From contig OZ251248.1 of NCBI GenBank assembly GCA_965240325.2, forward strand, positions 62,001 to 126,000: a DNA stretch of 64,000 nucleotides, read 5' to 3'. Shown one piece after another: positions 9,164-37,026 of this stretch. The notes under the pieces were generated by a model, which was given only the letters and a program-made list of their open reading frames with translations, had not been told where the DNA came from and did not search any database. A program made the translations under genes and the position numbers. Each line of letters opens with the position of its first letter. Positions within the stretch are counted from its first letter, which is position 1. The stretch comes from Rebecca billardiae RCC1528. Taxonomy: Eukaryota; Protista; Haptophyta.

Positions 9164-9477
9164 ATGGCGCCCCCTGGCGCCGCGCTCCCCCCACTCCCCG
9201 TGCCCCCCGCGCCGGCGCCGCCCGCGGCCGACGGCGGCGGCCGCGCGCGCGACGGCGGCGCGGGCGGCGCCGAGCCGCAGCAGCAGCAGCTGCGCGCCGC
9301 CGGCTCGACGCCGCACATCCGCTCGGCGCGCGAGGCGCGCACGGCGCCGCTGGAGGGCGAGCGGCCGGACGCCCGGCCCTCCTCCGCCCCGCGCCGCGGC
9401 TCGAGCACCCAGCTCCCAACCCTCGGCGCCGCGGCCGACGGCGGCGGCGCCAAGCCGCCGCCGCCGCGGCCGGCGTG

Positions 9478-9516
<39 letters not shown>

Positions 9517-11912: not shown

Positions 11913-11950
<38 letters not shown>

Positions 11951-12150
11951 GCGTCCGGCGGCGGCGCCGGCCCCACGCAGATCCGCGTGCACCCGGTCGC
12001 GGAGGGCGACGAGGAGGAGGAGGGCGGCGGCGTCGGCGGCGTCGGCGTGGGCGTGGGTCCGGGCGTGGCGGGCGAGGAGGAGGACGACGCGGCGAGCGGC
12101 TCCGCGGGCGGCGCGGGCTCGGCCGGCGCGGGCTCGGCGCACGCGGACGA

Positions 12151-12188
<38 letters not shown>

Positions 12189-14999
12189 GCGGCGGCGGCG
12201 AGGGCGGCGAGGGCGAGGAGGCGGACGGCGACGACGACGACGACGACGACGATGGCGGCGGCGGCGTCGACGCGCGCGCGGCCGACGCGGACGGCGCGGG
12301 CGCGGATGGCGGCGTGGCGCCGGGCGGCGGCTCGATGCGGCGGCGGGTGCGGCGCCGGCCCCGCGCCGACGGCGGCGGCTCGGACGCGAGCAGCTCGGCC
12401 GGCGGCGGCAGCAGCTTTGCGCGCACGCCGCGCGGCGGCGGCGGCGTCGGCGTCGGCGTCGGCGGCGTCGGCGGCGGCGTGGGCGGCGGTAGTGGCGGCG
12501 CCGACGCGCTCGGCGCGGCGCGCGGCGCGGCGGCCGCGGCCGCTGCGGCGATGGCGGAGGCGGGCCTCGCGGCGGACGGCGCGGATGATGGCGAGGACGA
12601 GCGGTTCGCAGAGCCGGCGGGGTACGCGGCGGAGGCGGCCGACGCCGACGCCGGCCCGCTCGTCGAGCTGGAGTACTGGCGGCGGCGGATGGGCGCGATG
12701 CTGCAGATCGAGCAGCAGCTGCGCTCGCGCGAGGCGGTCGCCATCGTCGGCGTCGTGCTGCACTCGGGCCGCCGCTTCCGCGAGCTCGCGCGCCGGTGGC
12801 AGGACCTCGTGTTCGGCGTGACGGACGCGGCGAACGAGGCGAAGGACAACGTCAAGTACCTCACGCTGCTCGAGCCGCAGCTGCGCGCGCTGTACGGCGG
12901 CTCGCTCGGCGCGATGGCCGAGGCGGTCGCGCCCCTCACCGAGCAGCTCAAGCTGGTCGGCACCGTGTCGCGCCACTACAACACGACGGAGCGGCTGGCC
13001 AACCTGCTGCACCGCGTGGTGCACCAGACGGTGCGCAACATGCGCGCGTGCCTCGAGCCCGCCGGCGGCCCCGCGCTGCTCCGGCAGCACCCCGCGCCCG
13101 CGCTCGAGCGGCTCTCGGAGGCGCAGGCGCTGTGCCGCTCGCTCGAGGCGGCGGTGCGCCGGCTCGCGGCCGAGCTGCCCGCCGGCCGGCTGGGCGGCGG
13201 CGAGCTCGACGCGCTGCTCGCGCCGCTCGAGATCTTCGCGCACCGGCTGGAGCAGCTGGGCACGGTGCTCTCCACGTGCCTCCAGTTCGCCGAGCTCGGC
13301 ACGATGCGCGTCGACGGCCTCGCCGAGCTCGCCGCGCTCTTCCGCGCGGCGCTGCGCGTGCTGCACGGCCGGCACGCGGCGGTGCTCGACACGTCCAACG
13401 CGCGCTTCGAGATCGACTTTTACCACTTTTTGGTGGTGGTGCGCAACCTGGAGAGCACGCTGCAGTCGTACATCAACGCGCGGTTCGACAACACGCGCAA
13501 CACCGAGGCCGCGCTCCAGCTGCTCTCGCAGTTCTCCGGCCTGCTGCGCGCGGGCGTCGTGCGCGACGACCTCTCGTCCAAGCTGGCGGTGATCTTCTCG
13601 GCGTACGCGCTCGACCTCGAGGACGTGCAGGCGCTGTACGAGGCGCACAAGGGGCGGCCGCCGTGCCCGCGCGGCTTCCCGCCCGTCGCGGGGCGCGTCG
13701 TGTGGGCGCGCCAGCTCCTCCGCCGCATCGAGCAGCCCATGCGCTACTTTGGCGCGCACGAGGCGCTGATGCGCGCGCCCGACTCGCGCAAGATTGTAAG
13801 GCAGTACAACCGGGTCGCGCGCGTGCTCGTGCAGTTCGAGGGGCTGTGGGTGGGCGCGTGGGCGCGCGGCGTGCCCGCGGTGCGCCGCGCGCTCGACGCG
13901 ACGCTGCTCGTGCGCGACCCGTCCGACGGGTCGCTCCACGTCAACCTCGACCCGGCGGTGCCGCAGCTGCTCGCCGAGGCGCGCCACCTGCTGCGGCTGG
14001 GCGAGGCCGTGCCGGCAGACGCGCTCACGCTGCTGCACGCGGCGCCGCGGCTGCGCGCGCACGCGAACGCGCTGGCGCACGCGCTGGGCGTGCGCGCGCG
14101 GCTGGGCTCGGCGCTGCCCGCCGAGCTGCGCCCGCTCCTCAAGCCGCACGTCGACGCCGTCGACGCCGTCCTCGCCGAGGGCACGGTCGCGCACACGTGG
14201 GCGGGCGCAGACACCTACTTCTTCCTGAGCGGCCTCGGCGGCGCGCTCGCCGACCTCGAGACGCTCGTGGGCAAGGTGAAGGCGGTGGCGGAGGTGCAGC
14301 TGCACCGCTCGCTGCGCAGCATGGCCGCCGCGCAGCTCGTCTCGCTGCCGTCCGAGGGCACCGTCGCGCTCGCCGAGTTTGTCGCCGTGCAGGTGAGCGC
14401 GGCGCCGTGTTGTCTCGTGTGTGTGCGTGGAGTGTGCGCGCGTGCGTGTGCGCGCGTGTTGTCTCGTGTGTGCGCGTCGAGTGTGCACGCGTGTGGAGTG
14501 TGCGCGCGTGCGTGTGCGCGCGCGTTGTCGTCTTTGAGCGTTGAGCGTGCGCGTGTGCGTGTTTGTGTGTGTGCGTGCCAGTGCGCGCGCGCGGCGGCGA
14601 GCGCGCACGTGCGCGCGGGCTGCGCGGCTCACGCGGCGCGCGCGCGCGCGCACCCGCCCGCCCGCCGCAGCGCGAGTCGTGCGCGCGCGCGGCCGCGCTG
14701 CTCGACGCCAAGTCGGAGGAGGCGGAGCGCGCGGTCAACCTGCTCTTCGAGATGGCGGCGGAGGCGCCGCTCGGCGGGCGGCGCGTGCCGGTCGAGCCGG
14801 GCGCGATGGCGGCCGTGCGGCGGCACTACGCCGAGCTGTGCGAGCACGCGGTGCTGAGCGCGGTGCGCGCCGCGCTCAAGGCGCTGCACGAGCGGCTCAC
14901 CGTGCGCGGCGGCGCGGCGCGGCTCGGCGCCGTCGGCGGCGGCGGCGGCGCGCTCGTCGGCGCTGGCGGCGGCGGCGGCGGCGGTGCCGCCGCCGCGGC

Positions 15000-15032
<33 letters not shown>

Positions 15033-18000
15033 GCGCGGCGGCGGCGCGGCCAAGCCGGGCGGCGGCGGCGGCGCGCGCGCGCCGCCGCCCGGCGCGGCCG
15101 CGCCGTCCGCGCCCGCGGCGCACGCGCGCGCGCTCGCGCCGCCCGCGCCCACACCCGCCCAATCGGCACCCGCCGGCGTCGCCGGCCGGTCCGGCGCGGT
15201 CGGCCCGCCGATGCCGCCCGTCGGCGGCTTCCTGTGGACGCAGCGGCCGTTTTTCGAGGTGCACGTCGAGCTGAGCGTGCCCGCCGTCTCCATCGTGCCG
15301 TCGGTGGACGCGGTGCAGGGTGCGGTGAACGGCGCGGCGCGCGAGGTGCTCGGCGTCGCGCGCGCGCTGCAGCCGTGGAGCTGGCCCGAGTCGATCGCCG
15401 AGCAGCTGCAGGCGGCGGACGCGGCGCACGCGCGGCTGGACGCGTCCGCGGCCGCCGCGCGCGCGCACTCCATACTCGCCCCGTCGGGCGGCGGCGGCGG
15501 CGGCGGCGAGGAGGAGGGCGCGCTCCATCACTCATCGGAGTACGGTGGCGGCGGCGGCGGGCTTGGCGCGGCCTCGCCGCTCGCGCGCACGCCCGCGCGC
15601 TCGCCGATGCGCTCGCCGTCCGCGCGCGGCGGCGGGCTGGGCGCGCACTGGGGCTCTGCCTCGGAGCGCGGCGGCGGCGGCGACGACGGCGGCGGCGGCG
15701 GCGGCGTTCTGCTCAGCCGCGCGGAGCGGCAGCGCCTGCAGCAGGCCGTGGCCGACGGCGCGTTCATCCGGTGCGCGCGCGCGCGCCGAGATCGCAACCT
15801 CGCGCCCGCGCGCGCCGACGCGACCGCCGCCGCCGCGCGCCCGACTGAGCGCGCGCGCCCACGCGCCGCCGCCGCCCGCCGCGCGCGCGCGCGCGGCGCA
15901 GGCGCGCGCGGCAGCTCTTCGACGCGGCGGCGCACGCCGAGGCCGCGGCGCGCGCGTCCGCCGCCGCGCCCGCGCCCGCCGAGCCCGCCGGCGGCTCGGC
16001 GGCGGCGCGCCCGCCGGCGGCGCGCGCGCGCGCGCCCGCCGGCCGCGAGATTGCAATCTCGCGGCAGAACTCGCCGCCCGCGCTCGCGGTCGTGGTGCCG
16101 GGGCGCGAGATTGCAATCTCGAAGGAGTCGATGCGCGCGACGCTGCTCGCCGAGCTGCTCCACGGCGTGCCCGGCCACGGCGGCGGCGCGCACCCCGCGC
16201 ACGCGCACGGCCACGCGCACGGCCACGGCGGCGGCGCGGGCGGCGCCGACTGGCTGCGCGATGAGTCGGGCGGGCCCTCGGCCGGCGGCGGCGGCGGTGG
16301 TGGCGGTGGCGGCGGCGGCGCGGCCGCGCCGCGCTCGCCCGCGCCGGCGCGCAGCCCGCGCCCGTCGGGCAGCTTCAGCGCGGCGCGGCGCGCGCCGTCG
16401 CCCGCCGCCGCCGCCGCCGCGGCCGCGGCCGCCGGCGCCAAGCCCGCCCACGCGGCGCGCGCGCTCGGCGGCGCGGCCGCGGCGGGCGCGGGCGCGGGCG
16501 CGCAGCAGCAGCAGCAGCAGCAGCAGGCGCAGCAGCAGGCGCAGGCGAGCGCGTCCGCCGCGGTGGCGCGCGAGCGCGCGGCGGCGGTCGCGGCGATCGA
16601 GCGGCGGCTCGGCGCGGCACTCGCGCGCTCGGACCGCGACCACTCGGGCGACGTGACCTTTGCCGAGTTCCTCGCCACGTGCAAGCGGCTCTCGCGCCGC
16701 GCGTCCTTCTCGATGCTGCCGCGCGTCGGCTCGGACATGTCGGTTGTGGTGGCGGTGCTGCGGCTGGCGGGCGGGCTGCACGGTCTCAAGCTGGCGGTGG
16801 ACGCGCACACGGCCACGTTCGCAGACTTCTCGCACCTGTGGACCGCGTCGGTGCGCGAGGAGGTGGGAGCATTCGTCGCGGGCTCGCCGCGCCCCGAGTC
16901 GTTCGTCGCGCAGCTCGACGGCTACGGCGGGCTGGACGCGCGGATCGCGCGGCTGGCGCCCGTGCACACGGCGGGGCCCTTGTCCCTCAACGCGACCCAC
17001 CTCAAGGTGGCGCTGCGCGCGGAGTGCGCGGCGTGGCGCGCGGCGTACGCGGCGGAGCTGCACGCCATCGCCAAGGCGCGGCTCGAGACGCGCCTCGCGC
17101 ACTTTGCCGAGTGCCGCCGCCACCTCGGCCGCGAGATTGGCCACCTGCTGCTCGCCGCCGAGGCGGGCGGCTCGGGCGGCGCGGCGGCGGGGCAGCCCGC
17201 GGCCGACGAGGCGGGCGGCGGCGGCGGCAGCGGCGGCGGCGGCGGGCTGCTGGGCACGTCGCTGCTGTCGGAGGTGCGCGCGCTGCTGCACGCGGTGCGC
17301 ACGATGCACGCGGCGGACGAGGCCGTCGACCACGACGTCTCGCGCCTCGAGGAGCTGTACGGCCACCTCGCGCGCCACGCGGGCGCGGCGGACGTGCCGC
17401 GCGCCGAGCTGGACGCGGTCGACGAGCTGCGGCATGAGTGGCGTGTGCTGCGCGCGCGCGCGGATGAGCGCTCGGCGGAGATGTCGGGGCTGCAGGAGCG
17501 GCTGCACGCGCAGCTGCTCGGCGCGCTGCGCACGTTCACGGCCGAGCTGCGCGCGCTCGGCGCCGAGTTCGACGCCGCCGGGCCCATGTCCGCGGGCATC
17601 TCGCAGGGTGAGGCGCGCGCGCGCCTCTCGCGGTTTGCTGCGTCCGCGGACAACAGGGCGCTGCAGCTGCGCGAGCTGAACGTGGGCGAGGCGCTGTTCG
17701 GGCTGCAGCCCACGTCGGCGCTCGAGCTGGGCGAGATCCAGCGGCAGTGCGCGCTGTGCGAGCGCGTCCTCGGCCTCGAGGCCGAGCTCGAGCGCACCGT
17801 CGTCCGCCACCTCGACGCGCCATGGGCGCAGGCGGCCGAGCGGCTGTCCGACGGCGCGTTTGGGAACGCGGTCGCGTCGATCGCCGGCCTCGCCGCCAAG
17901 CTGCCGCCCGAGGCGCGGCGCGCGCCGGCGTCGGCGCGGCTGCGGCGCACGCTCGAGGCGATGCGCTCGGTCGTGCCGCTGCTGCAGGCCCTCGCGCACC

Positions 18001-18273
18001 CCGCCATGCGCCCGCGCCACTGGGAGGCGCTCTCGCAGCTGTGCGGCCTGCCAGAGCCGCTGCGGCCGCGCGAGCCGTCGCTCACGGCGCGCGCGCTGCT
18101 CGACGCGGGCGTGCGCCTCCGCTCGGCGGAGGTGCTCGCGCTGTGCCACACGGCGCGCGAGGAGGCGGCGCTCGAGGCGCGGCTCGACTCGACCGTCTCC
18201 GACTGGTGGTCCGCCTCGCTCGCCCTCACGCACCCGTATGCGCCCGGCGGCGCGCCATCCGGCGGCGGCGCGG

Positions 18274-18314
<41 letters not shown>

Positions 18315-19737
18315 GACGGGCGCGCGCTGCTCGACCTCGACGCGGCGCTGGAGCAGCGCGCGCGGATCGACGACGCGCTGGCCGAGCTCGCGTCGATCAC
18401 CGCCTCGCGCTACGGCGAGCCCTTCGCCGCGCGCTGCGCCGACGCGATGGCGCGGCTCGGCGCGGTCGGCGAGCTGCTCGACGCGTTCACGCGCGCGCAG
18501 CGCGCCTACGTGCGGCTGGCGCCGCTGTTCAGCGCGGCAGACGTGGCGCGCTCGCTGCCGCGGCAGGCGAAGGTGTTCGAGGCGGCGGAGCGCGGGTGGG
18601 ACAAGCTGCTCCGCCGCGCGGCCGACTCGCCCGCGCTCGTCTCCCTCGCCGACGCCGACTCCGCGCTGCTCCACGCCATCGAGCACGTGCTCGCGCAGCT
18701 CGAGTCGTGCGCGCGCGCACTGTCCGCGTACCTGCACGCCAAGCGGCGGGTGTTCCCAAGGCTCGGGCTGGTGGGCGACGCGGCGCTGCTCGAGCTGCTC
18801 TCGCAGGCGGGCGCGCAGCCCGCGGCGGTGCTCGGGCCGCAGATGCCCGCGCTCTTCGACGCGGCGACGCGGCTGCTCCTCGTCGACGACTCGAGCGCGC
18901 TCGCGCCCACCACCGCCGCGGCCGGCGGCGGCGGCGGCGGCGGCGCGGAGGGCTCGGCAGAGGAGCGTGCGGCGGCGGCCGCCGCGACCGCCGCGCGGCG
19001 CGTGCGCTCGCACGCCGCGGGCGGCGGCGGCGGCGGCGGCGCGCGAATCGGCGGCGGCGGCGGGCCGGGCGGCGGCTCGCACAAGCCGCCGCCCCTCTGG
19101 CGCATCGTCGGCCTCGCCGACGCGGCGGGCGAAGTGCTCGCGCTCGCGCCGCCCGCGCTCACCATGGCCGCGGGCGCGCGCGGTCGCGCGGCCGCGGCCG
19201 CGGCGGCGCACGCCGACGGCGGCGGCGCGGCGGCGCACGCGGCGGGGGCGGGCCCGCCCTCCGCCGCGCAGCCCGCGCCGCCCGCCGCGCTCCCGTCCAT
19301 CGGCGACGCCACCGTCGCCGTGACGGTCGCTGAGGTGGACGCTGAGTGCGCGGAGCACGGCGCGCGCGTCGCGCCGCCCGGCGCGCCCGGCTCGGGCGGC
19401 GCGCGCGCGCAGGCGCTGGCCGCGCTGGGCGCGGCGGCGGGCGGCGGGCTGGGCGGCGCGGGCGCGCTCACCGCCGCGGGCGCGACCACGCGCGAGGTGG
19501 GCATCGAGGTGGCCGGCCCCGTCGAGGGCTGGCTCGCGCGCGCGCTGCACCTCGCGCGCTGCGTGCTGCGCGCGCACTGCCGCGCGGCCGCGGCGGACGC
19601 GCTCGACGGGCTCGGCGTCGCCGCGTCGACGCCCGAGGCGCTGGCGGAGCCGCACGTGCCCGCGCAGGCGGCGGCGCTGTGCCTCGCGCTGCGCTTCGAC
19701 GCGGAGGTCACCGACGCGCTCGGCGCGATGGCGGCGA

Positions 19738-19768
<31 letters not shown>

Positions 19769-20143
19769 GGGCGGCGGCGCGGCGCCGCTGCTCGCGGTCG
19801 GCCGCCGGCTGCGCGCGCGGATCGCGCGCGTCGCCGACGCGACGCTGGGCGCGCACGCGCACGCCGCGGCGTCGGAGGCGCGGCGCGGCGGCGGTCCCGC
19901 GGCGCCCGGCGCGCCCTCCGCGCTCGCGTGGGCGCGGCTGCAGGGGCTCTGCCTCGAGCTGATCCGGCAGCGCGACGCGCACGCCGCGCTCCTCGACGCG
20001 CGCGCCGCCTCGGCCTCCGACTGGGCGTGGGCGGGGCAGCTGCGCCCCGCCTTCTCGACGAGCGCGCCCTCGCCCGGGTACGGGCACCAGCACATCAGCA
20101 CAGGCGGCGGCGGTGGCGGCGGTGCGGGCGGCGGCGGCGGCGG

Positions 20144-20176
<33 letters not shown>

Positions 20177-23100
20177 CGGCGGTGCCAAGGGGTGCGGCTG
20201 CGGCCCAAAGCCGGGCGGCGGCGGCGCGAGCAGTGCGGTGATCAGCTCCGCCGTCGAGCGGCGGCAGGCGGTGGACGCGGAGCGCGCGGTCGGGCGCGGG
20301 CCGGGCGGCGGCAAGGCGGCGGCGGCGGCGGCGGCGGCCGCGGCGCAGTCGCAGGCGGAGGCGCGCGCGGCGGCGGGCTCGATGCAGCTGCTCGCGCCCG
20401 GCGGCGTCGCGGTGGAGTGCGGCTTCGAGTGGGCCGGCGGCTTCGGCGCCGGGCTCGCGCAGCACGGCGGCTCCGCCGGCGGTTACGCCGGCGGTTACGC
20501 GTACGTGTGCGGCGGGTACGGCGGGTACGTGCTCGGCGCGGGCACGGCGCGCGCGCAGCTCGCGCTCGCGCACGCGCTGCGCGACCTGCGCGCCGTCTCC
20601 GTCGTGAACGCGGGCGGGCCGTCCGTCGCGCCCGTCGGCGTCGGCCGCGCGTCCACAGTGCGCGCGCTCGCCGCCGCGGCGGGGCGTCTGTGCGTCACCG
20701 TCACGGCCGCGCCCGCGGGCGCGGCGGCGCTGCCGCGGCTGCTCGCCGCGGCGGCGGGCTCGGGCGCGTGGCTGCTGGTGCGCGAGCTCGAGCACGCCGC
20801 GCCGCCCGCCGCGCTCGCGACGCTCTCCCTCGGCCTCGCCGCCGCGCTCGGCGCGCTGCGCGCCAAGGCGCGCTCCTTTGTCGACCCGAGCGCGCCCGCG
20901 CCCGCCAACGGCGCGGACTGGGGCGCGGCCGCGCTCGTCTCGGGGCGGAGCGGCGGCGCGTCCGACCCGGCCGCGAGCCCGGTGCTGCTCGCGTACCCGT
21001 TCGCGTGCGCGCTCACGCTGCCCGCGCCGATGGGCGCGGGCCGCGCGCCGCTGCCGCCCGCGCTGCGCGCGCTCCTCCGGCCGGTGGCGCTGGTGCCGCC
21101 GCACCCGCCAGCGCTCGCGGCCGCGCTGCTCGGCGCCGCCGGCTTTGCCGACGCGCCGGCGCTGTGCGCGCAGCTCGGCGCGGCGTGCGCGTTCGCCGCG
21201 CACGCGCTCTGCGCGCCGCACAAGACGGCCGACGGCTACGCCGGCGTGCCCACGCGCGGCGGTGTGATGCACGCCGACCTCACCAAGGGCCAGCTGCTCA
21301 ACGCGCACACCGCCGCGCGCGCGGCGCACGGCGCGGCCGAGGCGCGGCGCGCGCACGGCGCGCGCGCGGCGGCGGCGGCGCTCGCGGCGGGCGCGCGCGA
21401 CGACGGCCCCGCGGCGGCGGCGGCGGCGGCGCTCGGCGCGGCCACGCCCGAGCTCGAGCGCGCCTGGCTCGCCGAGGGCTGGCGCCGCGCGGTGAGCGCG
21501 CGCCTGCCCGCCGCGGACGCGGCCGCCGCCACGCAGGCCGTGAGTGCGTACCTGCTCGCCGAGCGGCCGCCGCACGCGCCCGCGCCGCCGGGCGGCGCGG
21601 ACGGCGGCGGCGCGAGCGGCGGCGGCGGCGCGGCGGCGGCGGGCGGGCCGACGACGGGGCGGCGCTCGCCGCCCACCGTCGTCGCGCCCGCCGAGGCGGC
21701 GGAGGCCGTGGGCGCGCCCGCCGCGGCCGCGCCGCCGTCCGCGGCCGGCGCTTTGCCCGCGGGCGGCGGCGGCGCGGGCGGCGGCGGCGCGGCCGCCGCG
21801 CCGCTCGCGGCCGTGGGCGGCAAGGGCGGCGAGGGCGGCGGCGTGGGCGCGGCGCAGCGCGCGGCGCTGCTCGACGCGCTGCGCCGGCCCGACGCGCTCG
21901 CCACCGCGCCGCCCGCCGCGCCGCTGCCGCCCGCGCCCGCGCCCGCGGCCGCGGCCGCGGCGGCCGGCACCGGCCGCGGCGGGCCGGCGGTGGCGCGGCG
22001 CGCGGCCGAGCAGCGCGCGGCCGAGCGCGCGCTCGCGCGCGCGGCGGAGCGCGGCGCCGCGAGCCTGCGCGCGCCGCCGCTGCGCGAGGCGGAGGCCTTC
22101 GTCGCGGCGTGCGAGGCGCTGCACGCCGCCGCGTCCGCGCACGCGTGCGTCATCGTCTGCGGCGAGGCGGGCTCGGGCAAGACTGAGGGTACGCGCGCGG
22201 TGCTGCGCATGCGCACGCGGCTGCTGCACGCGCCGCCGCCGGGCGGCGCGCACGCGCGCCGCGGCTCGTCGCACCGCGGCACGAACGCGCCGGGCGGCGG
22301 CGGCGGCGGCGGCGGCGCGCGCCGCGGCCGCGCCGCCGCCGCCGCCGCCGCCGCCGCGCAGTGGCGCGAGTGCCGCGTGTACACGGGTGCGCTCTCAACC
22401 GCCGCGCTGCTCGGCGGCACGCACGCGCGCCACCGCGAGTGGGCGGACGGCGCGCTCACCGCGGCGTGGCGCGCCGCGCTGGAGGAGACGAGCGCGGCCG
22501 CGGCGGTCGGCGCGGGCGGCGGCGTGTGGCTCGTGCTCGACGGCCCGCTCGCCTCCGCTGGCGCCGCCGCGTCCGCGGGCGGCGCGGGCGGCGGGCTCTC
22601 GTCCGAGGTCGCGCTGCTCGAGGTCGGCGCGGCGCTGCGCTCGCCCAAGCCGACGCTCGCGCTGGGCAACGGCGACCGGCTGCCGCTCACCGCGGGGATG
22701 GGCGTGCTCTTCGAGACCGACTCGATCGCGCACGCCGCGCCCGCCGCGCTCTCGGGCTGCGCCCTCGTCCAGTTCGGCCCTGAGCTGCCGTGGCGCGCGC
22801 CGTGGGCGCGCTGGCTGGCGGCACATCCGTTGCTCTCGCCAAAGCAGCGCGCGACGCTTGCCTCGCTGGCGGACACGTACTTGGGCGTGGCGGGTGCGCC
22901 GGGCGGGGGCGGCGGCGGCGCGGCGGCGGCGGGGGCGCACGGCGGGCAGCACCCGCCGCCGCAGCCGCACGCGCGCGGCGGCGGCGGCGCGCTCGCCGTC
23001 GCCGCGCTCGCGTGCGGCCCCACGGCGCTCCCGCAGACGGACGGCGCGCGCGTGTGCACGCTCACCGCGCTCATCGACGCGCACCTCGCGGACGCGCACG

Positions 23101-24577
23101 CGGCGGCGCTCGAGCTGGGCGAGGAGATGGGGCAGGACGAGGGCGGCGACGGCGCGGACGGCGGCGGCGACGAGGCCGAGCTGCGCCGCGCCGCGCCCGC
23201 CGCCTCCGAGGCGGGTGGCGCGCGCGGCGGCGCGCGCGAGCCACCCTCGCGCGGCGGCGGCGGCGGCGGCGGCGGCGCGCCGTCGGGCCCCGTCTCGGCC
23301 GACGCGCTGCCGGGCACCGAGTTTGCCCGCGACCGCGCGTCCGCCGTGCCCGGGCTGGGCGCGCTCGCGCTCGAGCGCATCTTCGTGCATGCGCTGTGCT
23401 GGGCGCTGGGCGGCGCGCTGCCCGCGGCCGGGCGCGCGCGGCTTGAGCTGTGGCTGCGCTCCGTCGCGCAGGGGCCGGAGAAGGCGGGCGGCGCGGGCTC
23501 GGGCGGCGGCGCGGGCGGCGGCGGCGGCGGCGGCACCGCGGCCGCGATCGCCGCCGCCAAGGCGCGCGGCGCCGCGGGCGCCAAGGGGCGCGCGGCGAAG
23601 GAGGCGGCGGCGGCGGCGGCGGCGGCGGCGGAGGCGGTGGCCAACTCCGTCCTCCCGCCCGCGCCGCCGCCCAGCCCGCCCCCCGGCTCCGCCGCCGCCA
23701 CCGCCGCGGCGGACGGTCTCTGGGGGCTGTTGCTGCGCGTGAGCGCCACCGCCGCTACGTGGGAGCAGGCGGACGAGGCGCTCGCGGCGCTGCGCGGCGG
23801 CGGCGCGGACGGCGGCGGCGCGGACGGCGCCGCCGCCTCCGCGCCGCTGCACTCCGGCTGGACGCCCGCCGACGCGCTCGTGCCCGCCGTGCCCGCCGCG
23901 CTCGTCGGGCCGGGCCAGCCGCTGCCGCTCACGGCCGGCCGCGCGCTCGCCGTCACGGGCGAGTTGCTGGTGCACTCGGCGCACTCGCTGGCGATCGGGC
24001 TGGTGCTGCGGCTCGCGCACGCGCCGCCGCCCGCGCGCGCGCACGCGGAGGGCGCGGGCGAGGCGAGCCGCGCGCCCAACGCGCGGCGCCTCGCGCTGCT
24101 CCTCGGCGCGCCCGGGCTGGGCAAGCGCTCGATCGCACGGCTGCACGCCGCCGGCGCGTGCGTGCGCGCCTACTCGCGCGCCGCCGTGTTCGGCGGCGGC
24201 GGCGCGGACGACGGCGGCGGGAGCGGCGGCGGCGGCGGCGGCGGCGCGCGGCAGCTGCGGCCGAGCGTGGGGTATGCCGAGCTGCCGATGCGGCTGCTCC
24301 GCCTCGCCGGCGCGTGCGGGCTGCACGGCGCGCTGCGCGCGCAGCTCGACGCGCTGCCGCAGGGCCGCGCGCTCGGGCCGGCGGGCGGGCGCGCGCGGCT
24401 CACCGTCTGCATCGACGACCTTGGCGTGGGCGGCGGCGGCGGCGGCGCGTGCGCGGCGGCGGAGGTGCTGCGGCAGCTGCTCGACTCGCGCACGCTGCCC
24501 GCGGCGCAGGGCGCGCCGAGCTCCGCGTCCGCGTGGGCCGCGCCGCTCGTGCCCTCCGCCGTGCCCGCGCCGCCCGC

Positions 24578-24619
<42 letters not shown>

Positions 24620-24840
24620 GGGCGCGCGCGGCGGCGGCGGCGCGGGCGCGCGCGGCGGCGCGGCGGGCGCGGCCGCCGCGGCGGTGCACGCGGCCGCCGC
24701 CGTCGCGGGCGGCGTGGGCGTCGAGGGCCTCGCCCTCCTCGGCATCGTGCACACGCCGGCCACGCCACTCCACTCGCAGCCCGCCGCGCCGCCGCCGGGC
24801 GCCGGCGCCGCCGCGCCGCCGAGCGGCGCGCACGGCCGCG

Positions 24841-24872
<32 letters not shown>

Positions 24873-25483
24873 AGCGGGCGCTCCAAGGCGGGCGCCGCGG
24901 CCGCGGCCGCGGCGGCGGCGGCCGCGCCGCCGCCGCCGCCCGCGCACGCGCGCGCGCAGGGCGCGCTCTCCGCGCGGCTCACGCGCCACGCCACCGTGGT
25001 CGCGCTCGGCGCGCCCACGGGCCGCATCGTGCAGCAGCTCTTCGCTCCGCTGCTGCGCGCGGCGCTCTTTGCGCCGCCGCCGCGGCCGGCGGGCTCGGCG
25101 CTCGCGAGCGTCGCGGACGGCGCGGCGGCGGCGGCGGCGGCGGCGGCGATGGCGGCGGCGGCGGCGGCGGGCGCGGCGGGCGGCGGGAGCGGCAACGCGC
25201 TCGTCGACGGCGGCGGCTTTGCTCAGCCGCTCGCCGCCACCGCCGACGCTGTCGCCGCTGCCGGCGGCGGCGGCGGCGGCGGCGGCGCGGCCGGCGGCGC
25301 GGGCGGCGCCGCGGGCGGCGCCGCCGCGCCCACGCCCGCCTCGGCCGTGGGCACGGGCGGCGCGCGCGCCGCGCTCAACGCGTTCCACCAGGTACGCGCC
25401 GCGGGCAGCGGCGGCGTGCTCGGCGCCGCGGGCGCGCACGCCGCCGCCGCCGCCGCCACCGCCGGGCCGGCGGCGGTCGACCG

Positions 25484-25514
<31 letters not shown>

Positions 25515-26578
25515 GGCGGCGGCGGCGCGCGCGGCGCGCGCGGCCGCGGCGGCGGCGGCGCGGCGGGCGGCGGCGCGGCGGCGGGCGGCGCGGGCGGCGC
25601 GCGCGCCGGGCCGGCCGCGGGCGTGGTGGCCGCCGCGACGGGCGCCGCCGTGGGCGCGTCCGCGGGCGGCGCTGGCGCGTCCGCGGGCGCGGCGGCGGGC
25701 GCGGCGGGCGCGGGCGCGGCGGGCGCGGCGGGCGCGGCGGGCGGCGCGGACGGCGGCGGCGCGGACGGCGCCGCCGCCGCCGACGGCTCGTCGCGGCACA
25801 CCGTCTCGGCGGAGGTGGTCGCGGCGCAGCTAGCGCCGATCGTCGAGCTGCTGCCCGCGCTCACCGCCGCGCTCTGCACCGCCGCGCTCACCGGCCGGCC
25901 CGCCGAGCTGGGCGGCGCGGGCGCGGCGGCGGCGGCCGCGGCCGCGGCCGCGGCGTCCGCGCAGCAGCAGCCAGCACCCTCGCCGCACGGGCACGCGCGC
26001 GCCGAGCGCGGGCTGCACACGCCGGCGCACGCGCACGCGGCGCACGCGAGCCCCGCGCTCGTGCTCGCGCCGCCCTCGCCCTCGGCGCGCGCCGCGCAGC
26101 TGCCGCCGCCGCTGCCGCCGCCGCCGAGCGGCGGCGGCGGCGGCGCGGGCTCAGCCGGCGGCGGCGGCGCGCCGCTCGGCGGCGCCGCCGCGACGGTCGG
26201 GGCGACGGCGACGCCGTCCTCGCCCGGGCGGCGCGGCCACGGCGCTGCGGACGAGGAGGGCGCGAGCCCGCCCGCGCTGCCGACGCCCGAGCCGCGCACG
26301 CCTGGCGGCGGCGGCGGCGGTGCCGCCGGCGGCGGCGGCGGCGGCGCGGGCGCCGAGCGCGGCGGCGCGGACGGCGGCACCGCCGGCCCGGCGGGCGGCG
26401 GCGCGGACGGCGGCGGCGCCGCCGGTGCCGCCGCCGCCGCCGACGGCGGCGCCGCACCCGACGCCGAGCGGCGCGGCGGCGCGGACGACGCCGACGGCGC
26501 CTCTGCCGCGGCCTCGCGCGCCGCCGCGCGCGCCGCCACGCCCGGCGCGGCCGCCGGCGCGCGACTGGGCGACGAGCT

Positions 26579-26626
<48 letters not shown>

Positions 26627-27338
26627 GTGCGCGCCGGCCTCGCCGCTCTCCGCGCCGCGCGCGCCCGCCGCGCGGTACGGGCGCACGCCGCTGCCCGAGC
26701 GCTCCGCGGCCGCAGCGAGCGGCGGCGCAGACGCGTCGCACGAGCCCGCGCTCGCGGCGCTCTCGCCCGCGGCGGCGGCGGCGGCGCTCCTGAGCGCGGC
26801 GGCGGTGGGCGTGGAGGGCGGCGGCGCGCCCACGCTGCATGCGGTTTCGGCCGTGATGGCGGGGATCTCGTCGTGCCCCATCGTGCGGCTGGTGCGCGCG
26901 CGCGCCGAGTCGCTGGCCGAGCGGCGGGAGGAGGCGGCCGCGGCGGAGGCGGCGCTCGAGGACGCGGCGGCGCGTCTGCAGCGCGTGGCGCAGCTGCCGG
27001 CCGCGGGCGGCGCGAGCGCGGCGCTCGGCGGCGCCGCCGCCGCCGGGCTCGCGCCGCCGCCGCCGGGCGTTGCGCTCGCCGGCGCGGCCGCGGCGGCCGC
27101 CGGCTCGCCCGGCGGCGCGGACGCGCACCGCGCCGCCGGCCGCGGCCGCGCGCACCGCCCGCTCGTCTCGCGCCAGTCCTCGCACGACGCCATCGCCCCG
27201 CCGCCGCTGCAGCAGCCGGCGCGCGTCGCGGCCGCGGCCGCGGCCGCGGCCGGCGGCGGCCTCGCCTCCGCCGCCTCGGGCGGCGGCGGCTCGACGGCGC
27301 GCTCGGCGGAGCGGGACGCCGAGCCGGCGGCCGCGGCG

Positions 27339-27403
<65 letters not shown>

Positions 27404-29437
27404 GGCCGAGGGCGGCGAGGAGGAGGAAGGCGTCGCGGCCGGCGCGGCCGGCTCGCCCGCCGCGGCGGCGGACGGCGGCGGCGACGGCGGCGGCGCGGAC
27501 GGCGGCTCGCCGCGCGGCGGCGAGGACGGCGGCGCGGGCGCGGACGCCGACGCCGACGCGGACGGCGCCGCCGCCGGCGGTGGCGGCGGCGCCGAGCCGG
27601 CCGCCGCGGCCGCGTCCGCGGGCGGCGGCGCCTCGCCCGCGGCGGGCGCGGGCGGCGGCGGCGGCGGTTGCGGCTCGGAGCCCTCCGCCTCGCCCGGCAC
27701 CGCCGCGGCCGCCGCGCTCGCGCTCGGCCGGCCGCCGTCGGTGCGCCTCCCCGACAGCTGCGCGCCCGCCGCCGGCTCGGGCGGCGGCACGGCGCGCAGC
27801 GCGCTCGGCGCGCCCGCGCCGGCGGTCGCCGTGCGCCCGACCACGCCGCCGGACGCGGTGCCTGGCGGCGGCGGCTCGGGCGCGGGCGCGGGGCTGGCGG
27901 TGGAGGCGCCGCCGCCCACGCCGACGCCGTCGGTCGCCAGCACCGCGCGCGCGGGCGCGGCCGGCGGCGCGTCGGCGCGCCCGCCCGCCACGCCCTCGGC
28001 CGGCGGCGCCGAGCGCGAGGGGAAGGGCGGCGGCTCGTACAACCCGCCCAGCATCACGGCTGCAGCGTGGTGGCGGCGCGGCGAGAAGGCGCAGGCGCAC
28101 GAGGTGCACTCGGCGACGACGGTCGCGTCGATGGTGGGCCCGCCGCTGCTGCTCAGCCTGTGGCTGCACGAGTGCGAGCGCGTGCTGCTCGACGCGCAGC
28201 TCGGCGGCGGCGGCGGCGGCTTTGGCGCGGGCGTGCTCGGCGGCGCGGCCGCGGCCGCCGCCGCCGACGCCGGCGCCGAGCTGCCCGACGCGCTCGAGCT
28301 GCGAGCGCTGTACGCGCGCGCCGCGCCGCCCGGCGCGCTCGACGGCGTGGCGGCGGGCGAGGGCGAGGGCGGCGGCGGCGGCGCGCGGCGCGAGTCGCTC
28401 GGCCCGAGCGCCGAGCTCAGCCTCGCCTTTGGCGCCGCCTTTGCCGCCGGCGGCGGCGGCGGCGGCGGAGGCGGCGGGCACAGGCTGGGCGGCGGCGCGG
28501 CGGGCGGCGTGGGCGCGCGCGCGTGGCTGCACGGCCAGGCGGAGCGGCTGATCCGCGCGCTCTTCCCCGAGCACGCGGGCGCGGCGCTGCACGAGGCGCG
28601 CGCCACCGTCGTTTGGATGCCTGCCGCGCTGCAGCCCGCGCCCGCCGTCGTGCAGGCGGCCGTGCTCGGCGTGCCGCCGCCCGCCGCGCGCGCCGCCGCG
28701 CCGCCGCCGCTGCCGCTGCTGGCGCAGCGCGGCGAGGGCGGCGCCGAGCGCGAGCGCGGCGGCGGCGGCGGCGAGAGCGCGAGCTTCGCCGCGCGCCGCC
28801 GCTCCGCGATCGGCGAGCCGCCGCCCGGCGGCGTGCTCTGCTCCACCACCGGCGGCGCGTTCACACTGCCTCCCTCCTTTGTGGTCGGGCTCAGCATGGC
28901 TGCCGCCAACGGCGGCCATGCTGCCGCCGCCGCCGGCGGCCATGCTGAGCCGGGCGCGTCCGCGCCGCCGCTACTCGAGTGCCGGCCGTGGCTGAGCGCG
29001 GCGCAGGTGGCGGACGGCAGCGGGCTCGCCGAGCTCACGCACGCGCTGCGCACGCACGCGCAGGCGCTCGAGGCCGCCTCGCCGCCCATCCGCCGCGCCA
29101 TCGCGCCCTCGCCCTCGCAGCTGCTCCTGCACGACGGCGCGGTGCTCGCGGCGACGCGGCTGTGCCGCATCCTGGCGCTGCCGGCGGGCGGCGGCGGCTC
29201 GGCGGCGGAGGAAGGGCGCGGGCTGATCGGCGGCGGCTCGGGCGGGCACGCGCTCCTCCTCGCGCCCGCCGCGTCCGGCCGGCGCTCGCTCGCGCGCCTC
29301 GCCGCGTTCGTGCTGGGGTACGCGACGCTGATGCCGCCGCCGCCAGCCGCGGAGCAGGCGGCGGCCTCGGCCGGCCTCGCCGCGGCCGGCGCGCGCGCGC
29401 CCGCGGCCGGCGGCGGCGAGGCCGGCGGCGGCGGGGC

Positions 29438-29470
<33 letters not shown>

Positions 29471-29501
29471 GCGCCGCGACGCTGGCGGCGGCGGCGCGTC
29501 G

Positions 29502-29551
<50 letters not shown>

Positions 29552-30205
29552 GCCCGCGGCCGGCGGTGCCGCCGCGTCGCCGCTCGGCGGCGCGGCGGCG
29601 GCGGCGGCGGCGCTGCTCGACGGCTGCCTGTACCATGCGCTGCGCGCGGCGGTGGTGCTGCGGCAGTCGACCGCCCTCGTGCTCTCCGACGCGCACGTGC
29701 GCCACCCGTCCTTTGCGCCCACCGCGCACGCGCTGCTCCGCTGCCCCGAGCAGCTGCTGCAGATGCTGCCGAGCGCCCACGCGCACGCGCTGTGGGCCGA
29801 GCTCGAGGCGACCGAGCGGCTGCGCGAGCGGCGCGCGGCGGCGGCGGCGAGCGCGGCGGCGCAGGCCGCGGCGGACTCGGCCGCCGCCGCGGCGGCGGCG
29901 GCCGCGGCGCAGGCGCACGCCGCGGCCGACGAGCGCCGCCCGCGCGCGCTCGCGCCGCCGCCGCCCGACGGCGGCGGCGGCGGCGGCGGCGGCGGCGCGT
30001 CGGCCAACGCGCCGCCGCCCTCGCCCTCGCGCAAGTCGAAGCGCGCGCACGCGCCGCTGCCGCAGGCGCGCGCGCTGCGCGAGCCGGCGCGCGGCGCTGA
30101 CATGAGCCGGAGCTCCGCCGGCGGCGCCGCGCTCGCCGCCGCCGCCGCCGCCGCCGGCGGCGCGCAGGGCGGCGGCGGCGGCGGCGGCGCTGGCGGCGGC
30201 GGCGG

Positions 30206-30238
<33 letters not shown>

Positions 30239-31094
30239 CGGCGCCGCCGCCGCGGGCCCGGCCGCGGCCGCCGCGGCCGCCGCCGCGGCGGCGGCGGCCG
30301 CCGCCGCGTCGGCCGCCTCGTCCGTCGGCGTGCGCCGCGCGTCGCTCGGCGACGAGCTCAACGCGTATGGCCGGCCGCCCGCGGGGCACGGCGCGGGCGG
30401 CGGCGGCGCGGACGGCGGCGGCGCCGACGGCGGCGGCGGCGAGGGCGGCGGCGGCGGCGCGTCCGCCGCCGCGGCCGCGGTCGGCGCGGCGCCCGCCGAC
30501 GCGCGGCTGCTCGCCGCGGCCGCGCGGCGCGTGCGCCGCCACGTCCGCCTCGTCGTGATGCTCGCGCCCTCGCCGCCCGACGGCGCGCTCGCGCGCGCCG
30601 CGTCGGCGGCGGGCGTCGGCGGCGGCGGCGGCGGCATCGAGGCGCTGTTCGCGTCTGAGCGTGCGCTTCTGCACTACCTCACGCCGCTCGCGCTGCCGCC
30701 GTGGCCGGCGTCGGCGCTGCGCGGGCTCGCGCTCGGCGCCGTCTCGGACGCGGACGCGTCCGCCGCCGCGCTCGCCCTCGCGCCGCCGCACCACCTCGAC
30801 CCGGAGGGCTTTGTCGAGTCGGCGCCGCTCGGCTCTGGAGGGTACGGCGTCGCGGCGGCGCTCGCGGCGCGCGGCGGCGCGCACGGCGCCGCCGCGGCCG
30901 CGGCCGCGGCGGAGGCGGAGGGCGAGGGCGAGGCGGAGGGCGGCTCGCTCGCGCCGCTGCGCGCCGCGCCCACCTCCGCGCGCCCGCAGTCCGCGCTCTC
31001 CACCGGCACCGCCTCGTCGGGCGCGGACGATTTGGCGCTGGCGGCGCTGAGCTGCGCGCTGTCGTCCGCATCCGCCGCGTCCGCGGCCGCGCCG

Positions 31095-31132
<38 letters not shown>

Positions 31133-33828: not shown

Positions 33829-33872
<44 letters not shown>

Positions 33873-34038
33873 TCGGACGGCGCCGACCCGGCCGGCGCGC
33901 CGCTCACGGAGGCGGACCGCCCGCCCGCCGCGCTGCGCGGGCTCAGCCGGCGGCGGCACTCGTTCGCGCTCGCGGCGGCGGCCGCCGCCGCCAGCGCCGC
34001 CGCCGCGGACGACGGCGGCGCCGGCTCGTTCGACGGGC

Positions 34039-34094
<56 letters not shown>

Positions 34095-35647: not shown

Positions 35648-35678
<31 letters not shown>

Positions 35679-35998
35679 GGCTCGGGCGCGGCGCCCGCGT
35701 TCGTGCCGCCCGGCGGCTGGCCCGCGTGGCTCTCCGTGCGCGCCGTCGCCGAGGTCGTCGCGCTGCACGCGCTGCCGCCCGCCTTTGGTCTGCGCTTCCT
35801 TGCCGTGTCGCTCGCGTCCCCGCTGGCCGACACGCAGGCGGCGTGGCAGCGCTTCGTGGCGCTGGCGGAGCCCGAGCGCGCGGCGCACCCGCGGTTCGCG
35901 CGCGACGAGCTGCCCGCGCTCTCGCGGCTGCTGCTCGTGCGCGCGCTCCGCCCCGACCGCGCCGAGGCCGCCGCGCTGGTGTACGCTCAGGAGGTGCT

Positions 35999-36061
<63 letters not shown>

Positions 36062-36209
36062 AGCGCCCGCCGCGCTCGGCGCCGCGCCGCCCGCCGCCGT
36101 CGGCGCGGGTGCGCTCGTCACGCCCGGCGCGGCCGGCGGCGGCGCGCGCCTCGGCGGCGGCGGCGCGGGCGGGCTGCCCGCCGGCGGCATCGGCGCGCTC
36201 GGCGCCGCC

Positions 36210-36243
<34 letters not shown>

Positions 36244-36920: not shown

Positions 36921-36960
<40 letters not shown>

Positions 36961-36986: not shown

Positions 36987-37026
<40 letters not shown>

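What the first reader, a model, noticed from the sequence alone, without database searches (positions are those of the whole stretch)
20550..21110. Dynein AAA1, the main ATPase site, looks catalytically dead while the microtubule-binding domain is retained
Seen: Walker A (canonical GPAGTGKT) reads APVGVGRA (20628-20651). Walker B (WGCFDEFN) reads WLLVRELE, and the sensor-I Asn of TMNPGYAGR is absent (LTLPAPMGAGR). AAA2 GEAGSGKT (22161-22184), AAA3 GAPGLGK and the MTBD helices (~31790-32400) remain recognisable. Known: the AAA1 Lys and Walker B acidic residues are needed for motility. Inference: this is a pseudo-motor acting as a microtubule tether, brake or scaffold, analogous to degenerate chains such as DNHD1.
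Basis: partly seen in the sequence, partly recalled or inferred. Interest (0 to 1): 0.85.

Follow-up and report, generated by a model that had tools for sequence, protein, structure and literature searches.

The report
Giant dynein with dead main ATPase
A GC-rich haptophyte alga carries an intact, twice-normal-size flagellar dynein gene whose main ATP-burning site has lost its key residues while its microtubule-binding stalk is kept, a protist counterpart of the non-motile dyneins recently described in animal sperm.

Summary
At 20628-20651 the AAA1 Walker A reads APVGVGRA (canonical GPAGTGKT). Walker B reads WLLVRELE (WGCFDEFN), and the sensor-I Asn is gone.

- **No hidden site.** No other frame of the gene holds an intact AAA1 P-loop.
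- **Real gene.** It spans about 9200-42050. It includes one 24.2-kb open exon with GC3 of 0.97 throughout and no stops, where about 38 are expected.
- **Family.** The tail is a well-conserved outer-arm gamma (DNAH5/DNAH8) type.
- **What is kept.** The linker, the AAA2 P-loop, the stalk and the MTBD are retained.
- **What is degenerate.** AAA3 is weak, AAA4 has K to R, and AAA6 is undetectable. Ala/Gly-rich inserts roughly double the protein's size.
- **Shared, not an error.** The only close relative found is a fragmented, mis-annotated locus in Pavlovales sp. CCMP2436. It shares the derived AAA1 (GxGR, D to K, Asn lost) across three GT-bounded exons. This rules out assembly error or recent private decay.

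The best reading is a conserved non-motile heavy chain. The tether or brake role is only inferred. The closest known are DNAHX (2025 preprint, reported absent from protists), DNHD1 and Kollmar's orphan dyneins, so I rate it a new variant of a known kind.

Three things are untested: expression, a canonical gamma paralogue, and orthologues outside the Pavlovales relative. This scan also noted a second AAA1-dead dynein elsewhere in this genome, which I did not check.

The parts
9200..42050 (+). Whole dynein heavy-chain-like gene (approximate limits). From codon periodicity: exon A about 9200-14450, exon B about 14700-15900, exon C about 15900-40200, exon D about 40500-41100, last coding stretch about 41400-42000.
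   Evidence: GC3 periodicity and frame switches. Pfam DHC_N1, DHC_N2, AAA_6, MT, AAA_9 and a weak Dynein_C hit, in order. Exon limits are inferred from composition, not from RNA.
12629..14392 (+). Tail (DHC_N1) of the outer-arm gamma / DNAH5-DNAH8 type.
   Evidence: Pfam DHC_N1 E 3.3e-112. The best solved match is the Chlamydomonas outer-arm gamma chain, 310 bits, ahead of the beta and inner-arm classes at 149 bits or less. Own profile 371 bits.
17265..18890 (+). Linker (DHC_N2).
   Evidence: Pfam DHC_N2 E 5.8e-52. Own profile 264 bits. Best solved matches are DNAH5 and outer-arm gamma. 61% identical to Pavlovales KAJ1631679.1.
20529..21167 (+). AAA1 module, degenerate.
   Evidence: Own profile 18.6 bits, aligned over model positions 1872-2049. 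phmmer to solved dyneins. AF2 model with mean pLDDT 62 whose best structural matches are all dynein motors.
20628..20651 (+). AAA1 Walker A position: APVGVGRA (canonical GPAGTGKT). Lys to Arg, Thr to Ala.
20769..20792 (+). AAA1 Walker B position: WLLVRELE (canonical WGCFDEFN). Asp to Arg, Glu kept.
21012..21044 (+). AAA1 sensor-I position: LTLPAPMGAGR (canonical ITMNPGYAGR). Asn lost. The following LLRPV Arg is kept.
22086..23480 (+). AAA2 with intact P-loop GEAGSGKT (22161-22184) and recognisable LDGP and LFE..D..A.PA..S motifs.
   Evidence: Own profile 52 bits. The best solved match is DNAH5.
24105..24488 (+). AAA3 remnant: P-loop GAPGLGKR (24105-24128) and Walker B RLTVCIDDL.
   Evidence: weak: 7.7 bits in a restricted search.
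29241..29327 (+). AAA4 P-loop region GHALLLAPAASGRRSLARLAAFVLGY. Lys to Arg.
   Evidence: Own profile domain 6. Weak Pfam AAA_8 hit.
31416..33008 (+). Stalk CC1, MTBD (about 31800-32410, with a low-complexity insert of about 65 aa before H3), CC2 and the start of AAA5.
   Evidence: Pfam MT 1e-11. Own profile 45 and 103 bits. Alignment A2. AF2 model pLDDT 82.9, matching dynein stalk structures 5ayh and 3wuq at TM 0.85-0.88.
34443..36002 (+). AAA5 and following conserved blocks.
   Evidence: Pfam AAA_9 1e-7. Own profile domains 9 and 10.
40390..40596 (+). C-terminal domain remnant, in a different frame (exon D).
   Evidence: Pfam Dynein_C 6e-4. Own profile positions 4392-4446.

Best explanation
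This is an intact, selectively maintained gene for a giant heavy chain of about 10,000 or more residues. It descends from the outer-arm gamma (DNAH5/DNAH8, OAD-alpha) dynein family.

Its tail and linker are conserved. It should therefore still assemble with intermediate and light chains and a partner heavy chain, as gamma-type tails do. That step is inferred from family knowledge.

Its AAA1 site has lost the residues that bind Mg-ATP and catalyse hydrolysis: Walker A Lys to Arg and Thr to Ala, Walker B Asp to Arg, and the sensor-I Asn. It therefore cannot run the ATP-driven powerstroke and release cycle. The substitutions are shown in the sequence; the loss of activity is inferred.

The AAA2 structural nucleotide site, a straight coiled-coil stalk and an MTBD are kept. 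The head is thus most likely a folded but static ring that can still reach a microtubule.

The most likely role is a non-motile structural or regulatory heavy chain in or near the flagellar axoneme. It could be an ATP-insensitive cross-bridge (tether or brake), or a DNAHX-like inert partner for another heavy chain. Which of these applies is not shown.
For: **Motif losses.** They are aligned by three independent methods. No alternative intact AAA1 P-loop exists in any + frame of 8000-42600. None of about 110 dynein hits covering this P-loop has Lys to Arg.

**The gene is maintained.** Exon C is an 8068-codon open frame. Codon-position-preserving shuffles give a mean of 38 stops and a minimum of 20 in 2000 shuffles. 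GC3 is 0.94-1.00 in nearly every 300-bp window of exon C, against about 0.6-0.7 in flanking non-coding DNA.

**The derived state is shared with an orthologue.** The Pavlovales sp. CCMP2436 locus L001 encodes the same state in three exons, at least two of them ending at GT donors:
- Walker A: GATGAGRG.
- Walker B: WVLLKGLERA.
- Sensor-I Asn lost.
- 92 of 203 residues identical, including derived blocks such as ARAQLA-AHALRD and MRALLRP.
- Rough dN/dS is 0.48 for AAA1 and 0.35 for the linker, with dS about 1.

**Family of origin.** Tail, linker and AAA2 all match outer-arm gamma/DNAH5 best.

**Stalk and MTBD.** Profile 103 bits; model pLDDT 82.9 matching solved dynein stalks.

**Precedents.** DNAHX is a non-motile heavy chain derived from OAD-alpha, insert-rich, with a non-conserved AAA1 (10.1101/2025.01.18.633724). 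Orphan dyneins keep outer-arm tails while their motors diverge (PMC5100056). Gamma and beta tails alone suffice for outer-arm assembly (PMC12338079).
Against: - No RNA or protein evidence: no sequencing run was listed for this DNA. Expression, splicing and the reality of the Ala/Gly-rich inserts as translated sequence are therefore unproven.
- Only one orthologue was found, and it is partial and gap-ridden. With dS about 1 it may be a fairly close relative, so conservation is shown only over a modest evolutionary distance.
- dN/dS of 0.35-0.48 is relaxed for a dynein. It was computed on locally alignable blocks only.
- AAA3, AAA4 and AAA6 are so diverged that an intact ring is not demonstrated.
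- The AAA1 model has low confidence at the P-loop (pLDDT below 50). Both models lean on alignments of canonical dyneins.
- The MTBD carries inserts at a site where inserts are proposed to impair binding in DNAHX.
- The Walker B Glu is retained here, and Arg can sometimes partly replace the P-loop Lys.
Confidence: 0.6

Rival explanations
1. DNAHX-like inert partner or chaperone. The protein does not work on microtubules at all. It pairs through its tail and head with another heavy chain, holding it inactive for transport or assembly. The MTBD is vestigial.
For: It shares much with DNAHX: same family of origin, over-length, disordered inserts throughout including one before MTBD helix H3, and a non-conserved AAA1. 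An earlier scan note reports a second AAA1-dead, MTBD-less dynein elsewhere in this genome that could be a partner (unchecked).
Against: The stalk is predicted straight and canonical, and the MTBD helices are well conserved. This is the best-scoring part of the motor at 103 bits. In DNAHX the stalk is kinked and folded back. Nothing here tests pairing.
Confidence: 0.17
2. Still an active motor. Arg substitutes for the P-loop Lys, or hydrolysis has moved to another site such as AAA3, which keeps its Lys and a DD Walker B. The protein would then still generate force.
For: The Walker B Glu and the LLRPV Arg are retained in this species. AAA3 keeps GxxGxGK and IDDL. The linker is well conserved.
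Against: Four separate catalytic or Mg-binding positions in AAA1 are lost together. The Glu is not conserved in the orthologue (K-G). AAA3 lacks the P-loop Ser/Thr and is barely detectable. No known dynein moves without AAA1 hydrolysis (established knowledge of cytoplasmic dynein mutants, as summarised in the abstracts listed).
Confidence: 0.08
3. A decaying relic: a former gamma heavy chain under relaxed selection, on its way to loss as happened to flagellar dyneins in Emiliania huxleyi CCMP1516. It is kept open only because stop codons are rare at 85% GC.
For: The motor is extremely diverged and filled with low-complexity Ala/Gly runs (29% Ala, 18% Gly). dN/dS is relaxed. Dynein pseudogenes are documented in a haptophyte (PMC4438323).
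Against: There are zero stops where about 38 are expected even after preserving codon-position composition. The other five frames have 6-67 stops. GC3 of 0.97 and the frame are unbroken over 24 kb. The tail is as conserved as in canonical gamma chains. The derived AAA1 sequence is itself conserved in a second species with intact exon-intron structure. The E. huxleyi pseudogenes decay by large deletions, not like this.
Confidence: 0.1

Closest known systems
DNAHX (Chai et al. 2025, bioRxiv 10.1101/2025.01.18.633724; sea urchin XP_041462850 and animal orthologues)
   Same: It derives from the outer-arm alpha/gamma (DNAH5/DNAH8) family and is unusually long because of disordered inserts in the tail, motor and MTBD, including one before H3. 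Its AAA1 motifs (Walker A, sensor I, sensor II) are not conserved, and it is interpreted as non-motile.
   Different: - DNAHX keeps the Walker A Lys (Thr to Val) and Walker B, and binds ATP. Here Lys to Arg, Thr to Ala and Asp to Arg make Mg-ATP binding doubtful.
- The DNAHX stalk is kinked and folded back. Here the stalk is predicted straight.
- DNAHX is 5272 aa. This gene encodes roughly twice that.
- DNAHX was reported absent from protists. This is a haptophyte.
- Homology versus convergence could not be tested, because no DNAHX sequence was available to the tools.
DNHD1 (Kollmar class 11)
   Same: An aberrant heavy chain with disordered inserts and a poorly conserved AAA1 lacking catalytic Walker B residues. 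It is needed for cilia and flagella despite being a presumed non-motor.
   Different: It has a different origin: it has no gamma-type tail and no detectable specific sequence relationship. It is animal-specific.
[quoted passage not shown]
   Same: Their tails align to outer-arm class 3 or 4 while their motors are strongly diverged. They were argued to be bona fide genes that occupy outer-arm-like positions.
   Different: Class 12 lacks a typical MTBD and coiled coil, whereas this gene keeps both. The ATP sites of those classes were not analysed in that paper. No haptophyte member was described, because only fragments were known from E. huxleyi. Membership could not be tested without their sequences.
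Canonical outer-arm gamma heavy chain (Chlamydomonas ODA2, human DNAH5/DNAH8)
   Same: Tail (DHC_N1 376 bits), linker, AAA2, stalk-MTBD order and best-match family.
   Different: AAA1 catalytic motifs are lost, AAA4 has Lys to Arg, and AAA3 and AAA6 are barely or not detectable. There are about 5000 extra residues of inserts and an N-terminal extension of about 1100 residues.

Membership tests
Dynein heavy chain superfamily | Tail (DHC_N1), linker (DHC_N2), AAA modules, stalk/MTBD and C-terminal domain in canonical order. | tested here: met
   Pfam DHC_N1 3e-112, DHC_N2 6e-52, AAA_6 4e-8, MT 1e-11, AAA_9 1e-7, weak AAA_8 and Dynein_C, all collinear. Own profile gives 10 collinear blocks. AAA6 was not detected.
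Outer-arm gamma / DNAH5-DNAH8 (OAD-alpha, Kollmar class 3) heavy chains | Tail of the class-3 type. | tested here: met
   Gamma-family chains score 258-310 bits. Beta and inner-arm chains score 149 bits or less.
Outer-arm gamma / DNAH5-DNAH8 (OAD-alpha, Kollmar class 3) heavy chains | Catalytically competent AAA1 (GPAGTGKT, hhhhDE, sensor-I Asn). | tested here: not met
   APVGVGRA, LLVRE and no Asn. I therefore do not file it as a canonical gamma heavy chain.
Non-motile dynein heavy chains of the DNAHX kind | Descent from OAD-alpha, with non-conserved AAA1 catalytic motifs shared by orthologues. | tested here: met
   Family of origin. Degenerate AAA1 shared with the Pavlovales orthologue.
Non-motile dynein heavy chains of the DNAHX kind | Sequence orthology to animal DNAHX, including its AAA4 pre-sensor-II insert that locks the C-terminal cap. 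| not testable with these tools
   No DNAHX sequence or structure was retrievable.
Non-motile dynein heavy chains of the DNAHX kind | Disrupted, folded-back stalk and impaired MTBD. | tested here: not met
   The model shows straight CC1 and CC2 and a canonical MTBD core, TM 0.85-0.88 to 5ayh and 3wuq. A disordered insert before H3 is present.
Processed or decaying pseudogene | Stops, frameshifts, or loss of codon periodicity. | tested here: not met
   0 stops against about 38 expected. GC3 of 0.97 is unbroken over exon C.

The most novel reading that the evidence does not exclude
This may not be a side-copy. It could be the only gamma-type heavy chain of these haptophytes. Their three-headed outer arms would then carry a permanently ATP-dead, microtubule-binding inner head, with all force coming from the alpha and beta heads.

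Alternatively, it could be a deep orthologue of animal DNAHX/class-12. That would push non-motile 'dynein-X' back to an early eukaryotic ancestor, contrary to the claim that it is animal-specific.
Probability: 0.12. Interest if true: 0.8.

Novelty: new variant of a known kind. Interest (0 to 1): 0.55.

Why it matters
Non-motile dynein heavy chains have only just been recognised, through DNAHX and the DNHD1 disease genes. They are thought to be animal inventions.

A protist gene of the same design would show that turning an outer-arm motor into a static element is a recurrent or ancient solution. It has a gamma-type tail, a dead AAA1 and massive inserts, and it is conserved between two haptophytes.

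This version differs usefully from DNAHX. It keeps a canonical-looking stalk and MTBD, so it offers a natural test of what a dynein head does on a microtubule when it cannot hydrolyse ATP at AAA1.

It also shows that such genes are missed or shredded by annotation. The Pavlovales orthologue is split into small unrelated-looking models.

Tried and rejected
**Searches that found no orthologue**
- Word-index protein searches with the linker found only distant canonical dyneins.
- The same search with the AAA1 module found nothing.
- The same search with the tail found only canonical gamma-type tails at 37% identity or less.
- The exhaustive search gave one close hit (Pavlovales fragment, 54%). 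All other hits were about 30% identical and generic.
- The organism names of 20 top hits were unrelated eukaryotes.

**Candidate loci rejected as orthologues**
- L002 is a Chlamydomonas-like canonical gamma chain with intact GPAGTGKT.
- L003, L004 and L005 are canonical dyneins from metagenomes.

**Other dead ends**
- Two metagenome scans, using AAA1-specific and linker-specific conserved peptides, found no relative.
- Two sequencing-run searches listed no run, so read laying was not used and there is no expression evidence.
- An exact look-up of a neighbouring ORF to identify the assembly failed.
- I considered and rejected the idea that the true AAA1 sits in another frame or exon.
- I also rejected the idea that the long frame is a by-product of GC content.
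- A labelled phylogeny against DNAHX and class 12/13 was not possible, because those sequences could not be fetched.
Full report
**1. What is at the coordinates**

The window is extremely GC-rich, 75-89% over the first 42 kb. The finding lies inside an 8068-codon open frame, 16092-40298 on the + strand.

| Motif | Coordinates | Sequence |
|---|---|---|
| AAA1 Walker A | 20628-20651 | APVGVGRA |
| AAA1 Walker B | 20769-20792 | WLLVRELE |
| AAA1 sensor I | 21012-21044 | LTLPAPMGAGR |
| AAA2 P-loop | 22161 | GEAGSGKT |
| AAA3 P-loop | 24105 | GAPGLGKR |

Three independent alignments put the AAA1 residues on the AAA1 motifs of real dyneins.
- phmmer against solved structures aligns APVGVGRAST to GPAGTGKTET, GAWLLVRELEH to GAWGCFDEFNR and PMGAGR..LRALLRPVA to PGYAGR..LKALFRPVA.
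- Pfam AAA_6 matches the sensor-I/II part (E 4e-8).
- A profile I built from ten full-length heavy chains aligns residues 1480-1692 to AAA1.

Among about 110 dynein hits covering this P-loop, 95 read exactly GPAGTGKTET. A few aberrant ones differ elsewhere, but none replaces the Lys by Arg.

No other GxxxxGK[ST] exists in any + frame between 8000 and 42600 apart from AAA2. There is therefore no hidden intact AAA1.

**2. It is a real, maintained gene**

Codon-position GC shows one gene of about 33 kb.
- Exon A is about 9200-14450.
- A non-periodic gap follows.
- Exon B is about 14700-15900, in another frame.
- Exon C is about 15900-40200, in one frame.
- Exon D is about 40500-41100.
- A last coding stretch reaches about 42000.

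Across exon C, GC3 is 0.94-1.00 in nearly every 300-bp window. Flanking non-coding DNA sits near 0.6-0.7.

Shuffling bases within codon positions gives a mean of 38 stops, with a minimum of 20 in 2000 shuffles. The real frame has none, and the other five frames have 6-67. The long frame is therefore not a by-product of GC content.

The price is composition: 29% Ala and 18% Gly, in long low-complexity inserts.

**3. Architecture**

- **Tail.** Pfam finds DHC_N1 at E 3e-112 in exon A. The best solved match is the Chlamydomonas outer-arm gamma chain (310 bits), followed by the trypanosome, DNAH5/8 and Tetrahymena equivalents. Beta and inner-arm chains score 149 bits or less.
- **Linker and AAA2.** Both also match DNAH5/gamma best. 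The whole protein descends from that family and is not a chimera.
- **Collinear blocks.** My profile recovers linker (264 bits), AAA1 (18.6), AAA2 (52), AAA4 P-loop region (5), CC1 (45), MTBD-CC2-AAA5 (103), two AAA5/6 blocks (22, 24) and a C-terminal block in exon D.
- **AAA3.** It is visible only as GAPGLGKR plus RLTVCIDDL in a restricted search.
- **AAA4.** It reads APAASGRR, another Lys to Arg.
- **AAA6.** It is not detected.
- **Inserts.** About 1500 extra residues lie between AAA2 and AAA4, and about 500 between AAA4 and the stalk.

**4. Stalk and MTBD**

The alignment with 25 canonical dyneins keeps the CC1 Pro, the conserved Trp helix, H3-H6 and CC2. About 75-80 extra residues lie between H1 and H3, of which about 65 form a low-complexity insert directly before H3.

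An AlphaFold2 model built on that alignment has mean pLDDT 82.9. It shows straight CC1 and CC2 helices and a disordered 46-residue stretch at the insert. It superposes on solved dynein stalks: 5ayh at TM 0.88 and 2.8 Å, 3wuq at TM 0.85 and 2.3 Å.

The AAA1 model is weaker, with mean pLDDT 61.9 and the P-loop stretch below 50. Its best structural matches are all dynein motors.

Both models lean on canonical sequences in their alignments. They show compatibility with the fold, not proof of it.

**5. Orthologue**

The exhaustive search of 1.8 billion representatives returned one close relative. It is a 258-aa fragment, 54% identical (61% in alignment A4), annotated in Pavlovales sp. CCMP2436 (KAJ1631679.1).

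Its genomic locus (L001, GCA_026770615.1) is gap-ridden and split into small gene models. It nevertheless contains the AAA1 module in three exons, at least two of them followed by GT donors.

| Motif | Canonical | Window | Pavlovales |
|---|---|---|---|
| Walker A | GPAGTGKT | APVGVGRA | GATGAGRG |
| Walker B | WGCFDEFNRI | WLLVRELEHA | WVLLKGLERA |
| Sensor I | TMNPGYAGR | LPAPMGAGR | APSSAGGGG |

The two species share 92 of 203 aligned residues. These include blocks that differ from all canonical dyneins, such as ARAQLA-AHALRD, LE after Walker B, and MRALLRP.

The loss of the catalytic set therefore predates their split, and the new sequence has itself been conserved. Rough NG86 estimates give dN/dS of 0.48 for AAA1 and 0.35 for the linker, with dS about 1.

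It covers only a modest evolutionary distance.

No further orthologue was found by word-index searches or two metagenome scans. Other candidate loci proved to be canonical dyneins.

**6. Organism**

I could not identify the assembly. An earlier follow-up in this scan calls the genome a GC-rich haptophyte. My only independent support is that the sole close relative is a Pavlovales haptophyte.

**7. Interpretation**

Four things are shown:
- The catalytic residues of AAA1 are replaced.
- The gene is open and codon-structured.
- The derived state is shared by an orthologue.
- Tail, linker, AAA2 P-loop, stalk and MTBD are retained.

The following is inferred from established AAA+ and dynein knowledge. 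Without the P-loop Lys and Thr, the Walker B Asp and sensor I, AAA1 cannot drive the mechanochemical cycle, so the chain is non-motile. Because gamma-type tails mediate assembly with the beta chain and the IC/LC complex, and suffice for arm assembly even without the motor (PMC12338079), the protein probably joins an outer-arm-like complex.

Whether the head then acts as a static microtubule cross-bridge or as an inert partner is open. I give the general pseudo-motor reading 0.6, with the tether role as its favoured but unproven sub-case.

**8. Comparison with the known**

- Kollmar 2016 (PMC5100056) described 75 orphan dyneins and new classes that keep outer-arm tails but have diverged motors. 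That paper argued they are real genes and did not analyse ATP sites. It had only three fragments from a haptophyte.
- Chai et al. 2025 described DNAHX from sea urchin sperm. It is derived from OAD-alpha, is 5272 aa long with many disordered inserts including one before H3, has a non-conserved AAA1, is locked pre-powerstroke, and was stated to be absent from protists.
- DNHD1 is proposed to be a structural analogue.

The present gene is the same kind of thing in a protist. It differs in four ways: stronger loss at AAA1 (Lys to Arg, Asp to Arg), Lys to Arg at AAA4, a canonical-looking stalk, and about twice the size.

I file it as a new variant of a known kind. Orthology to DNAHX/class 12 could not be tested.

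**9. Limits**

- No run was listed for RNA or DNA.
- No canonical gamma paralogue could be searched for in this genome. E. huxleyi ESTs listed alpha and beta but no gamma outer-arm chains (PMC2784329). That is weak and sampling-limited, but it keeps the 'sole gamma chain' reading alive.
- Earlier scan notes report a second AAA1-dead, MTBD-less dynein elsewhere in this genome. I could not inspect it.

Noticed in passing
L001 (Pavlovales sp. CCMP2436, GCA_026770615.1 MU631431.1, 285257-308627): The orthologous giant dynein is annotated as several small unrelated-looking proteins (258, 179 and 301 aa) separated by assembly gaps and AT-rich introns. The gene is effectively missing from that proteome, which helps explain why protein searches find no family.
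   Followed up: partly
window 31900-32230: Between MTBD helices H1 and H3 the model predicts an ordered beta-hairpin plus helix (pLDDT 77-93), followed by a disordered Gly/Ala/Pro-rich stretch. This is the position of the 'flap' of some inner-arm dyneins and of the DNAHX insert before H3.
   Followed up: partly
window 16590-16700: The sequence DRDHSGDVTFAEF, between tail and linker, looks like a canonical EF-hand loop, as another first-stage note says. The Pfam scan of this protein reported no EF-hand family at E of 0.1 or better.
   Followed up: no
window 9200-12600: About 1100 codons of periodic, Ala/Gly/Arg-rich coding sequence precede the DHC_N1 tail. This is an N-terminal extension with no Pfam match. 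The canonical first ~280 tail positions were not detected.
   Followed up: no
window 49399-50952 (-): An ORF with a homeodomain (Pfam PF00046, E 1e-13).
   Followed up: no
window 45839-47221 (-) and 42300-44400: A lower-GC block (62-70%) without codon periodicity lies downstream of the dynein gene. A weak aspartyl-protease hit (E 2e-4) suggests a retroelement remnant. Another first-stage note calls part of this block a TOC1-like element.
   Followed up: no
window 29262-29285: The AAA4 P-loop also has Lys to Arg (APAASGRR), the same kind of change as at AAA1. Only the AAA2 site keeps a full GxxxxGKT.
   Followed up: partly
another piece of the same genome (earlier notes s1-360780, s1-360751): The scan has noted a second dynein-like gene with a predicted dead AAA1 and a stalk without an MTBD. 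If real, it could be a partner chain, like the class-12/13 pairing proposed by Kollmar.
   Followed up: no
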